A stretch of DNA of 64,000 nucleotides from Pocillopora damicornis (Eukaryota). Location of the stretch: NCBI RefSeq assembly GCF_003704095.1, contig NW_020846475.1, positions 682,001 to 746,000 of the forward strand, written 5' to 3'. This document shows, piece by piece, positions 24,428-25,092 of this stretch (position 1 is its first letter; each line of letters starts with the position of its first letter). The position numbers were made by a program, and so were the translations under genes. The notes beneath the pieces are model-generated. The model saw only the letters and a list, made by a program, of their open reading frames with translations. It was not told the DNA's origin and did no database searches.

Positions 24428-25092
24428 CTCCTCAAAGACGTTTCATTTTGTGTAGAAGGCATCACAAAGGCTGAGTTTGTAAAATTGTAAATATGTTTTA
24501 AATACACGGTGTATGTAGGATAATGATGCATTTGAGGTATGATATATATATATATAGGAAGTCTGTGTATTGATTTTTCTGTTTTACAGTGCTCGATACG
24601 TAGGAGCAGAGCGCGATATATACTGCGATAGAGAAGAAAAACAGAGAGACTATACCTTCATCCCTACAAGCCTGTTTCGTGATTACTCACTCATCACGTC
24701 TCCTCAAAGACGTTTCATTTTGTGTAGAAGGCATCACGAAGGCTGAGTTCGTAAAATTGTAAAAGTGTTTTACATACACGGTGTGTCAGGATAATGATGC
24801 GTTTGAGGTATGATGTATATATATATATATATATATGTATATGTATATAAATAGGAAGTCTGTGTATTGATTTTTCCGTTTTACAGTGCTCGATACGTAG
24901 GAGTAGAGCGTGATATATATTGCGAAAGAGGAGAAAAACAGAGAGACTATACTTTCATCTTTACAAGCCTGTTTCGTGATTACTCACTCATCAGGACGAT
25001 GAGTGAGTAATCACGAAACAGGCTTGTAGGGATGAAGGTATAGTCTCTCTGTTTTTTCCCCTATCGCAATATATATATATATATATATATAC
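24428..25092 (-). mobile_element. Hammerhead-bearing tandem/inverted repeat (retrozyme-like or Penelope pseudo-LTR-like)
   Basis: Two direct units starting CTCCTCAAAGACGTTTC at 24428 and 24700 (period 272; second unit longer by a TA expansion), then an inverted partial third copy from ~24996; each carries a hammerhead core. Confidence 0.8.
24962..24994 (-). ncRNA. Type I hammerhead ribozyme catalytic core (core intact, stem I imperfect)
   Basis: Minus strand reads CTGATGA-GTGA(GTAA)TCAC-GAAA-CAGGCTTG-TA: CUGAUGA box, 4-bp stem II with GNRA loop, GAAA, short near-palindromic stem III, GUA cleavage triplet. Sister cores at 24665-24697 (-, GTGATGA) and 24996-25028 (+, ACGATGA) have damaged first boxes. 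Confidence 0.75.

What the first reader, a model, noticed from the sequence alone, without database searches (positions are those of the whole stretch)
24428..25092. Retrozyme-like array: three hammerhead ribozyme cores in a tandem-plus-inverted repeat next to a GPCR first coding exon
Seen: two ~272-300-bp direct units and an inverted partial third copy. Each carries xxGATGA-GTGA(GTAA)TCAC-GAAA-CAGGCTTG-TA. The copy at 24962-24994 (-) has a perfect CUGAUGA/GAAA/GUA core. Stem III is very short and near-palindromic (ACAGGCTTGT). The other two copies keep the GGGA 3' stem I arm but have a damaged first box. Known: type I hammerheads with short palindromic stem III occur in Penelope-like elements and in 170-400-nt non-LTR retrozymes, where tandem units self-cleave (often as dimers) into monomeric or circular RNA; partial tandem plus inversion is typical of Penelope-driven insertions. 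Inference: this is an insertion of a small ribozyme retroelement family that may be undescribed. No single copy here has both an intact core and a full stem I, so activity at this locus is doubtful.
Basis: partly seen in the sequence, partly recalled or inferred. Interest (0 to 1): 0.85.

Follow-up and report, generated by a model that had tools for sequence, protein, structure and literature searches.

The report
Broken Penelope-like retroelement ends, not a retrozyme
The three "hammerhead ribozymes" are real but crippled leftovers of the tail ends of a common coral jumping gene (a Penelope-like retroelement) that landed head-to-head in a TA repeat and was then locally duplicated with host DNA, so the locus is ordinary and encodes no working ribozyme or RNA circle.

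Summary
The repeat anatomy and the three hammerhead-like motifs are in the sequence as described. They are not units of a small ribozyme retroelement.

- **What is repeated.** Only 155 nt of each 272/297-nt "unit" is multi-copy in the 234-Mb genome. The other 114 nt occurs nowhere else.
- **What the 155 nt is.** It is the 3' end of a roughly 3-kb Penelope-like element (PLE). The order is RT, a CxCX5C linker, a GIY-YIG endonuclease without the CCHH motif, a stop codon, a type I hammerhead about 75-100 nt later, then a (TA)n tail. These are the diagnostic traits of the published "Hydra" PLE clade of cnidarians.
- **The hammerhead.** Complete family copies carry a full hammerhead, with stem I AUCCC/GGGAU and a short near-palindromic stem III. 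All three window copies are cut off exactly at U4/G5, so they lack C3 and the 5' arm of stem I.
- **The one "perfect" CUGAUGA.** It takes its C from junction filler, and it sits inside a ~60-bp hairpin of about -98 kcal/mol.
- **Most likely history.** A head-to-head pair of 5'-truncated copies inserted into (TA)n. A later tandem duplication copied host DNA plus one fragment. One DNA run holds a one-unit allele.
- **Transcription.** RNA contigs show the left part of the array used as a plus-strand 5' exon spliced to the receptor's first coding exon. On that strand the two tandem fragments are antisense to the ribozyme, and the third lies in the intron.

The scan has noted the same family at other places in this genome. 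One earlier follow-up reached the same verdict.

The parts
24428..24541 (+). X1: first copy of a 114-nt segment found only at this locus (host DNA). RNA contigs cover it. It carries a GAG|GT donor-like site at 24536|24537.
   Evidence: only two genome matches, both in the window. X1 vs X2 94.6% identical. RNA contigs cover 24250-24512.
24542..24696 (-). P1: the 155-nt 3' end of the Penelope-like element, 5'-truncated at the U of UGAUGA. Its hammerhead remnant at 24663-24697(-) has G instead of C3 and no 5' arm of stem I. It ends in (TA)n at 24542-24556.
24697..24699 (.). 3-nt junction (cgt) between unit 1 and unit 2.
   Evidence: read directly from the sequence.
24700..24811 (+). X2: second copy of the locus-specific segment. 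Its GAG|GTATGA donor at 24807|24808 is used in an RNA contig that splices to 25271.
   Evidence: record 22 joins 24774-24805(+ag) to 25271-25300.
24812..24850 (.). (TA)n-rich tract at the 3' end of P2. It is the left half of the presumed microsatellite target.
24839..24993 (-). P2: second 155-nt element 3' end, with the same truncation point as P1. The hammerhead core at 24962-24994(-) reads CUGAUGA only because G24994 of the filler supplies C3. The 3' arm of stem I is mutated from GGG to AAG.
24994..24997 (.). Head-to-head junction filler (ggac) between P2 and P3.
24998..25092 (+). P3: inverted 81-nt short-form element 3' end running into (TA)n at 25069-25092. Its hammerhead remnant at 24996-25030(+) lacks U4 and the 5' arm of stem I.
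24808..25270 (+). Intron (GT...AG) of a plus-strand transcript. It contains P2 and P3, which fold into a ~60-bp hairpin.
   Evidence: spliced contig; zero RNA depth at 25086-25261 while DNA runs cover that stretch; fold of -98 to -106 kcal/mol.
25271..25508 (+). First coding exon of the neighbouring receptor gene, with ATG at 25281. RNA contigs show it spliced at both ends.
   Evidence: loose ends at 25269/25271 and at 25509; sub-threshold Pfam hits to Peripla_BP_6 and ANF_receptor.

Best explanation
The region is debris of a Hydra-clade Penelope-like retroelement (PLE).

The complete element, shown in other copies, runs in this order:
- a single ORF of about 680 aa (RT, a CxCX5C linker, a GIY-YIG endonuclease without CCHH);
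- a type I hammerhead about 75-100 nt after the stop codon;
- about 80 or 155 nt of 3' UTR;
- (TA)n.

Inferred history of the window locus:
1. Two severely 5'-truncated copies were laid down head-to-head in a (TA)n microsatellite. Both outer ends are element 3' ends abutting (TA)n. The inner junction falls inside the CUGAUGA box.
2. A tandem duplication then copied [114 nt of host DNA + (TA)n + one fragment]. This gave units of 272 and 297 nt that are now about 6% diverged.
3. A one-unit allele also exists. It is probably a later unequal-crossover deletion.

No copy at this locus can act as a hammerhead. All three lack the 5' arm of stem I and a correct C3/U4. The copy whose box was completed by filler is locked in a ~60-bp hairpin.

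The host transcribes the plus strand. X1-P1-X2 can serve as a 5' exon spliced from 24807 to the receptor's first coding exon at 25271. On that RNA P1 is antisense. P2 and P3 lie in the intron, P2 antisense and P3 sense.

At family level the hammerhead is real. As published for PLEs, it presumably works weakly and as a dimer when two copies lie on one transcript.
For: Multi-copy part versus unique part:
- The 155-nt part has 54 scored matches from 184 candidates, and the matches cover only query positions 115-269.
- The X segment has 2 matches, both in the window.

Family hammerhead:
- Other copies read AAAAUCCC-CUGAUGA-...-GUA|GGGAU.
- The 35-nt motif has 72 matches against 0 for the control.
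- In 44 aligned copies, 91.7% of cells are paired in stems I-III, against 20-46% when the partners are slid. Three copies carry an AU-to-GC double change in stem II.
- Rfam Hammerhead_1 aligns end to end (1-45/45) on an intact copy.

The ORF:
- In at least 15 loci the ORF's C-terminus ends about 75-100 nt upstream of the hammerhead.
- ORF pieces show the RT motif LYRDDGL, the thumb-like FLDV...KPT...HP, the linker CNCRQKNxC, a GIY-YIG without cysteines between IY and YIG, and CNLC...CHH.
- Full-length relatives are 670-685 aa and contain the RWK and DKT motifs.
- These match the Hydra-clade description, including (TA)n targeting and canonical hammerheads (PMC8557442 section 11).

5' truncation gradient (lower bounds): RT 71 matches, EN 150, and the highest locus-to-locus coverage over the 3'-terminal 155 nt.

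Architecture:
- The same [155-nt arm | inverted 81-nt arm] layout, with both arms ending in (TA)n, recurs at 7 or more other loci.
- Tandem and inverted 5'-truncated layouts are the published PLE signature.

Folding and reads:
- The hairpin folds at -98.4 kcal/mol on the minus strand and -105.8 on the plus strand, z about -20.
- DNA run X3 joins 24427 to 24700 and lacks X1. RNA contigs splice 24807|25271.
Against: - No full-length intact element was found in this genome, so the element's complete structure is pieced together from fragments and from database homologues.
- Clade assignment rests on diagnostic motifs, not on a phylogeny with reference sequences.
- No listed contig from an independent run bridges the P2|P3 palindromic junction, so that junction rests on the assembly alone.
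- The order of events (insertion first, then duplication) and the origin of the one-unit allele are inferred.
- Rfam gives no significant hammerhead hit even for intact copies (12.2 bits against a gathering score of 34).
Confidence: 0.88

Rival explanations
1. A non-LTR retrozyme: a small non-autonomous tandem element whose 272-300-nt units are transcribed, self-cleaved by the hammerheads (as dimers) and circularised.
For: - Tandem units of a typical retrozyme size, each with a hammerhead-like motif.
- Retrozymes exist in corals and derive from PLE ends (PMC7229834; bioRxiv 10.64898/2026.07.22.740005).
Against: - 114 nt of the unit is unique to this locus.
- No unit has both C3/U4 and a stem I.
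- There are only two units plus an inverted piece.
- RNA contigs point to plus-strand use as an exon and intron of a host gene.
- The multi-copy part sits at the end of an RT/EN ORF elsewhere.
Confidence: 0.03
2. One complex PLE integration event produced everything at once, including the duplication of host segment X, through template switching or a very long target-site duplication. There was no separate later tandem duplication.
For: - X1/X2, P1/P2 and P/P3 divergences are all similar, about 5-7.5%.
- PLE integrations are known to be complex, and long target duplications are mentioned for animal retrozymes.
Against: - P1 and P2 share exactly the same truncation point. A simple duplication explains this most economically.
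- The one-unit allele shows that the unit behaves as a duplicated or deletable block.
- No other family locus examined shows duplicated host DNA.
Confidence: 0.12
3. The inverted part (P2|P3), or the tandem, is an assembly artefact of a repeat-rich region.
For: - PLE tandem/inverted structures are known to trouble short-read assemblies (PMC8557442).
- No listed contig bridges 24993-24998.
Against: - Independent runs from other studies hold both X1 and X2 with their specific differences. A contig in run X18 bridges P1 into X2 at 24590-24729.
- The same head-to-head layout recurs at 7 or more other loci.
Confidence: 0.05

Closest known systems
Hydra clade of C-terminal-endonuclease Penelope-like elements (Craig et al. 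2021, PMC8557442)
   Same: - Cnidarian host and a single ORF of about 680 aa in an element under about 3 kb.
- RT followed by a GIY-YIG endonuclease.
- CxCX5C linker, no CCHH motif, and CxxC and C-H motifs around the conserved E/N.
- RWK and DKT motifs in full-length relatives.
- A canonical hammerhead, insertion into (TA)n, 5' truncation, and tandem/inverted copies.
   Different: Nothing was found that contradicts membership. The window holds only terminal fragments of 81-155 nt, and no phylogeny with reference members was made.
PLE-type / classical metazoan type I hammerheads with a short palindromic helix III (Cervera & de la Pena 2014, PMC4209133; Rfam RF00163)
   Same: - Family copies have the full core, G10.1-C11.1, a 4-bp helix II and a 5-bp helix I.
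- Helix III has 3 bp, and its sequence ACAGGCUUGU can pair with a second copy.
   Different: - The window copies lack C3 or U4 and the 5' arm of helix I.
- Helix II is 4 bp with a GUAA loop, which resembles the classical form rather than the 7-8-bp helix II of trematode min-HHRs.
- Rfam scores stay below threshold.
Animal non-LTR retrozymes (Cervera & de la Pena 2020, PMC7229834)
   Same: Unit size, low GC, tandem appearance, a type I hammerhead, and descent from PLE ends.
   Different: - The unit is not a family.
- Half of it is unique host DNA.
- No unit has a complete ribozyme.
- There is no sign of unit-length RNA of ribozyme polarity.
Twin-priming inversions of LINE-1 (analogy only, from general knowledge)
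   Same: Two 5'-truncated cDNA copies joined head-to-head, with both outer ends being element 3' ends at the target.
   Different: The enzyme machinery differs (GIY-YIG rather than an APE endonuclease). The PLE integration mechanism has not been solved.

Membership tests
Hammerhead ribozyme type I (window copies) | Complete core: C3-U4-G5-A6-N7-G8-A9, G12-A13-A14, A15.1-U16.1, H17 | tested here: not met
   - P1 has G at C3 and P3 lacks U4.
- P2 has the full core only through filler base G24994.
Hammerhead ribozyme type I (window copies) | Helix I pairing from 1.1-2.1 outward | tested here: not met
   - All three copies are truncated at U4/G5, so the AUCCC arm is absent.
- P2's 3' arm is also mutated to AAGAU.
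- Folding gives a 60-bp hairpin instead.
Hammerhead ribozyme type I (family copies elsewhere in the genome) | Core plus helices I, II and III kept across copies, with compensatory change | tested here: met
   - 44 copies show 91.7% paired cells against 20-46% when partners are slid, and core columns are at least 90% conserved.
- Three copies carry an AU-to-GC change in helix II.
- One sub-family has a 5-bp helix II and a GUC cleavage site.
- Rfam RF00163 aligns 1-45/45 but scores 12.2 bits, below its gathering score of 34.
Hammerhead ribozyme type I (family copies) | Self-cleavage after H17 | not testable with these tools
   All runs offered were contigs, which cannot show RNA ends.
Non-LTR retrozyme | The whole tandem unit is a multi-copy family | tested here: not met
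   The X half has 2 genome matches, both in the window. Matches to the unit cover only positions 115-269.
Non-LTR retrozyme | Each unit carries a competent hammerhead, so that unit-length RNA is released | tested here: not met
Non-LTR retrozyme | Unit-length linear or circular RNA | not testable with these tools
   Contigs only. RNA contigs instead fit plus-strand exon/intron use.
Penelope-like element, Hydra clade | RT followed by a C-terminal GIY-YIG endonuclease in one ORF | tested here: met
   - ORF pieces carry LYRDDGL, then YIGLTENDFKTRYRNH.
- tblastn of a 681-aa relative maps colinearly and ends just upstream of the hammerhead.
- Pfam itself gave no hit.
Penelope-like element, Hydra clade | Linker CxCX5C; CCHH absent; CxxC and CxH around the conserved E/N; RWK and DKT motifs | tested here: met
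   - By inspection, the ORF pieces show CNCRQKNxC, no cysteine between VIY and YIG, and CNLC...CHH.
- RWK (in P0018) and DKT (in P0003 and P0018) are present in relatives up to 84% identical to the genome's ORF fragment.
- The criteria come from PMC8557442.
Penelope-like element, Hydra clade | Canonical hammerhead, (TA)n target, 5' truncation, tandem/inverted copies | tested here: met
Penelope-like element, Hydra clade | Placement inside the clade in an RT phylogeny | not tested

The most novel reading that the evidence does not exclude
The PLE debris has been co-opted by the host gene. The duplicated X-P1-X2 block supplies a polymorphic alternative 5' exon and splice donor for the class-C-like receptor. 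The ~60-bp P2|P3 hairpin in the following intron is processed into small RNAs that act on the PLE family or on the gene itself.
Probability: 0.06. Interest if true: 0.4.

Novelty: already known. Interest (0 to 1): 0.12.

Why it matters
It matters mainly as a caution. In cnidarian genomes, tandem or palindromic "hammerhead arrays" of retrozyme size can be truncated ends of Hydra-clade Penelope-like elements plus duplicated host DNA. A perfect catalytic core can also arise by accident at a junction. Two modest side points follow:

- The recurrent 155-nt/81-nt head-to-head layout, with both arms ending in (TA)n, hints that the second cDNA starts at an internal UAUAUA of the template.
- This insertion is a structural polymorphism inside the 5' region of an expressed receptor gene.

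Tried and rejected
- **Rfam.** There was no hammerhead hit on the window at the gathering score or at E up to 10, and none on six loci with intact copies at E up to 1. Only a 121-nt slice gave sub-threshold Hammerhead_1 and RAGATH-1 alignments. The miRNA "hits" on the window are just the palindrome.
- **Pfam.** Ten ORF fragments, the 392-aa ORF and a 681-aa relative gave no RT or GIY-YIG hit. Domain calls therefore rest on motifs and on the literature.
- **Full tandem PLE copies.** I expected loci C4187 and C3613 to be full tandem PLE copies. They are instead copies of a larger repeat that embeds one composite. That composite is an inverted plus a direct endonuclease part, always broken at aa 419. 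There is no N-terminal ORF downstream.
- **An apparent anomaly.** P1 and P3 are 59/59 identical, whereas P2 and P3 are 95% identical over the same 59-nt arm. This dissolved over the full 81 nt, where the figures are 95.0% and 92.5%.
- **Reads.** All runs were contigs, so RNA ends, strand and cleavage could not be read.
- **Limits observed.**
  - N runs in fetched loci were left as they are.
The only consensus seen is the 62-nt majority line that the alignment tool prints on its own.

Full report
**1. What is in the sequence**

- Two direct units span 24428-24699 (272 nt) and 24700-24996 (297 nt). They differ in (TA)n length and by about 6% (X1/X2 94.6%, P1/P2 93.6%).
- An inverted arm lies at 24998-25076 and runs into (TA)n up to 25092.
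- Each copy carries xxGAUGA / GUGA-GUAA-UCAC / GAAA / CAGGCUUG / UA.
- On the minus strand, 24962-24994 reads a perfect CUGAUGA...GAAA...GUA.
- The copy at 24663-24697(-) has G for C3. The copy at 24996-25030(+) lacks U4.
- Rfam finds no hammerhead here at any threshold tried. A loose core pattern is expected about 0.87 times per window by chance. A single core match therefore proves little by itself.

**2. Only part of the "unit" is a repeat family**

- In the window's own genome (234 Mb, 4393 contigs) the 272-nt unit matches many places, but only over its positions 115-269. That is window 24542-24696, or 155 nt.
- The remaining 114 nt (X: 24428-24541 and 24700-24811) has two matches in the whole genome, both here.
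- The unit is therefore [locus-specific DNA + (TA)n + a 155-nt family fragment]. It is not a retrozyme monomer.

**3. The family hammerhead is complete, but the window copies are cut**

- Read on the ribozyme strand, other copies continue upstream as ...AAAAUCCC-CUGAUGA-... and downstream as GUA|GGGAUGAAAG. This gives a 5-bp stem I, AUCCC/GGGAU.
- The 35-nt motif has 72 genome matches within 3 mismatches, against 0 for the reversed control.
- In an alignment of 44 copies (A1) the three helices are paired in 91.7% of cells, against 20-46% when the partners are slid. Core columns are at least 90% conserved.
- Covariation is limited, as expected for a young-to-middle-aged family. Three copies change A-U to G-C in stem II.
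- A sub-family has a 5-bp stem II with both strands lengthened, and a GUC cleavage site.
- Rfam Hammerhead_1 aligns end to end with an intact copy but scores only 12.2 bits.
- Stem III is 3 bp. Its ACAGGCUUGU can pair with a second copy. This is the classical dimer-dependent design described for metazoan and PLE hammerheads (PMC4209133).
- All three window copies begin exactly at U4/G5. They have no C3 of their own and no 5' arm of stem I.
- The C of the "perfect" box is G24994 of the 4-nt filler between the inverted arms.
- That copy also has its 3' arm mutated from GGG to AAG. Either strand of 24930-25062 folds into a ~60-bp hairpin of -98 to -106 kcal/mol, z about -20.

**4. What the 155 nt belongs to**

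- Locus-to-locus coverage rises steadily toward the 155-nt piece and stops at (TA)n. This is the profile of a 5'-truncated retroelement.
- An ORF lies immediately upstream, in the same orientation, and ends about 75-100 nt before the hammerhead in at least 15 loci.
- Its pieces show several motifs:
  - the RT motifs ...TMGS.DGAE... and LYRDDGL;
  - a thumb-like FLDV...KPT...HP;
  - then NILWYNPPFSKN;
  - a CNCRQKNxC linker;
  - a GIY-YIG core (VIYQATV...YIGLTENDFKTRYRNH) with no cysteines between its two halves;
  - a terminal CNLC...CHH.
- Match counts in the genome are lower bounds. The endonuclease part has at least 150 matches and the RT part 71.
- Database relatives reach 670-685 aa. P0018 contains RWK, and P0003 and P0018 both contain DKT.
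- The published Hydra clade is described as mostly cnidarian, under 3 kb, with a single ORF, no CCHH, a CxCX5C linker, CxxC and CxH motifs, RWK and DKT, canonical hammerheads, and insertion into (TA)n (PMC8557442 section 11). Every one of these traits is seen here.
- The clade call rests on motifs, not on a tree.

**5. The layout is the Penelope signature**

- High 5' truncation, partial tandems and an adjacent inverted 5'-truncated copy are the described PLE arrangement. Dual hammerheads on opposite strands 100-700 bp apart were noted in 2014.
- In this genome at least 7 other loci repeat the exact pattern of a 155-nt arm joined head-to-head to an 81-nt inverted arm. The two that were checked (L005, L010) both end in (TA)n, as in the window.
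- The 81-nt arm always ends at an internal TATATA of the 3' UTR.
- My inference is that the second cDNA is primed where the (TA)n target anneals to that internal UAUAUA. This has not been shown.

**6. History of this locus (inferred)**

- A head-to-head pair (P|P3) entered a (TA)n tract just downstream of host segment X.
- A tandem duplication then copied [X-(TA)n-P].
- P1 and P2 share the same truncation point, which favours duplication over two independent insertions.
- Unit 1 ends ...catca-cg(t), and the P2|P3 junction reads ...catca-gga-cgatgag. This fits an original junction catca|cg|atgag that later gained 3 nt, and those 3 nt created the accidental C3. This step is speculative.
- In DNA run X3 a 744-nt contig joins 24427 directly to 24700, and X1-type sequence has zero depth. 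Run X1 breaks its contig at the end of the shared 38 nt, as expected for two units.
- The single X in run X3 is identical to X2 over 106 nt. The one-unit allele is therefore more likely a secondary deletion than the ancestor. That is also an inference.

**7. Transcription**

- RNA contigs from two studies cover about 24000-24805 and 25271-25508. They do not cover the unique stretch 25086-25261, which the DNA runs do cover.
- One contig joins ...cgtttg(ag)|ggtgtatc. This is a canonical GT...AG intron at 24808-25270.
- Other contigs join different upstream exons to 25271.
- The exon 25271-25508 starts with ATG at 25281.
- The host strand is plus. P1 is antisense in a 5' exon, and P2 and P3 lie in the intron.
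- Contigs cannot show strand or RNA ends, so this stays indirect.

**8. Comparison and verdict**

- Corals are already known to hold thousands of type I hammerheads. Most are PLE-like and some sit in 220-240-nt retrozymes (PMC7229834). Retrozymes are argued to derive from PLE ends.
- This locus fails the retrozyme criteria that could be tested, and it meets those of Hydra-clade PLE debris.
- The runs that hold the stretch are labelled coral or marine metagenomes. This was not checked.
- Earlier notes of this scan list the same kind of element at other places in this genome. One follow-up concluded "broken Penelope ends in a TA repeat". I reached the same reading independently on this window.

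Noticed in passing
L031 (C4187), L032 (C3613), and loci on C3635, C1269, C3414, C3657: A composite (inverted plus direct endonuclease part of the same PLE, always broken at about aa 419, then the hammerhead and 3' end) recurs many times together with 1.5 kb or more of shared downstream sequence, often several times per contig. It looks like a multi-kb macro-repeat that embeds one old PLE insertion. These contigs carry many N runs.
   Followed up: partly
L039:3217-4891 (minus strand of the locus; C3698): A second, unrelated PLE-type ORF (FDVVSLFT..., RYVDD, YIRQTKRLFGTRLKEH) lies about 2 kb upstream of a Hydra-type hammerhead. The genome therefore holds at least two PLE lineages.
   Followed up: no
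Proteins P0044, P0085, P0116: Relatives of the coral PLE ORF are 78% identical in a sea anemone (Nematostella) and 65% identical in a pipefish (Entelurus). One is filed under a gammaproteobacterial MAG. The identity is unusually high for such distant hosts. Horizontal transfer or contamination would be worth checking.
   Followed up: no
L009:1640-1676 and L012:1652-1675: Short (24-37 nt) inverted copies of the extreme 3' end sit next to the (TA)n of some insertions. They resemble the 30-40-bp 'tail' described for PLE insertions.
   Followed up: no
window 24000-24807 and 25271-25508: RNA contigs show at least three alternative 5' exons joined to 25271. One of them ends at 24807, inside the duplicated block.
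   Followed up: partly
window 33683-33755, 35101-35173, 62173-62245, 62269-62341: There are four tRNA-model hits with near-identical sequence. Two are degenerate (34.8 and 38.8 bits) and two form a divergent pair about 25 nt apart. They are probably a tRNA-derived repeat plus genuine genes. Another note of the scan already flags 33611-35300.
   Followed up: no
window 41388-41425 (-): An unrelated chance match to the loose CUGAUGA...GAAA...UH pattern. It shows how easily the bare core occurs.
   Followed up: no
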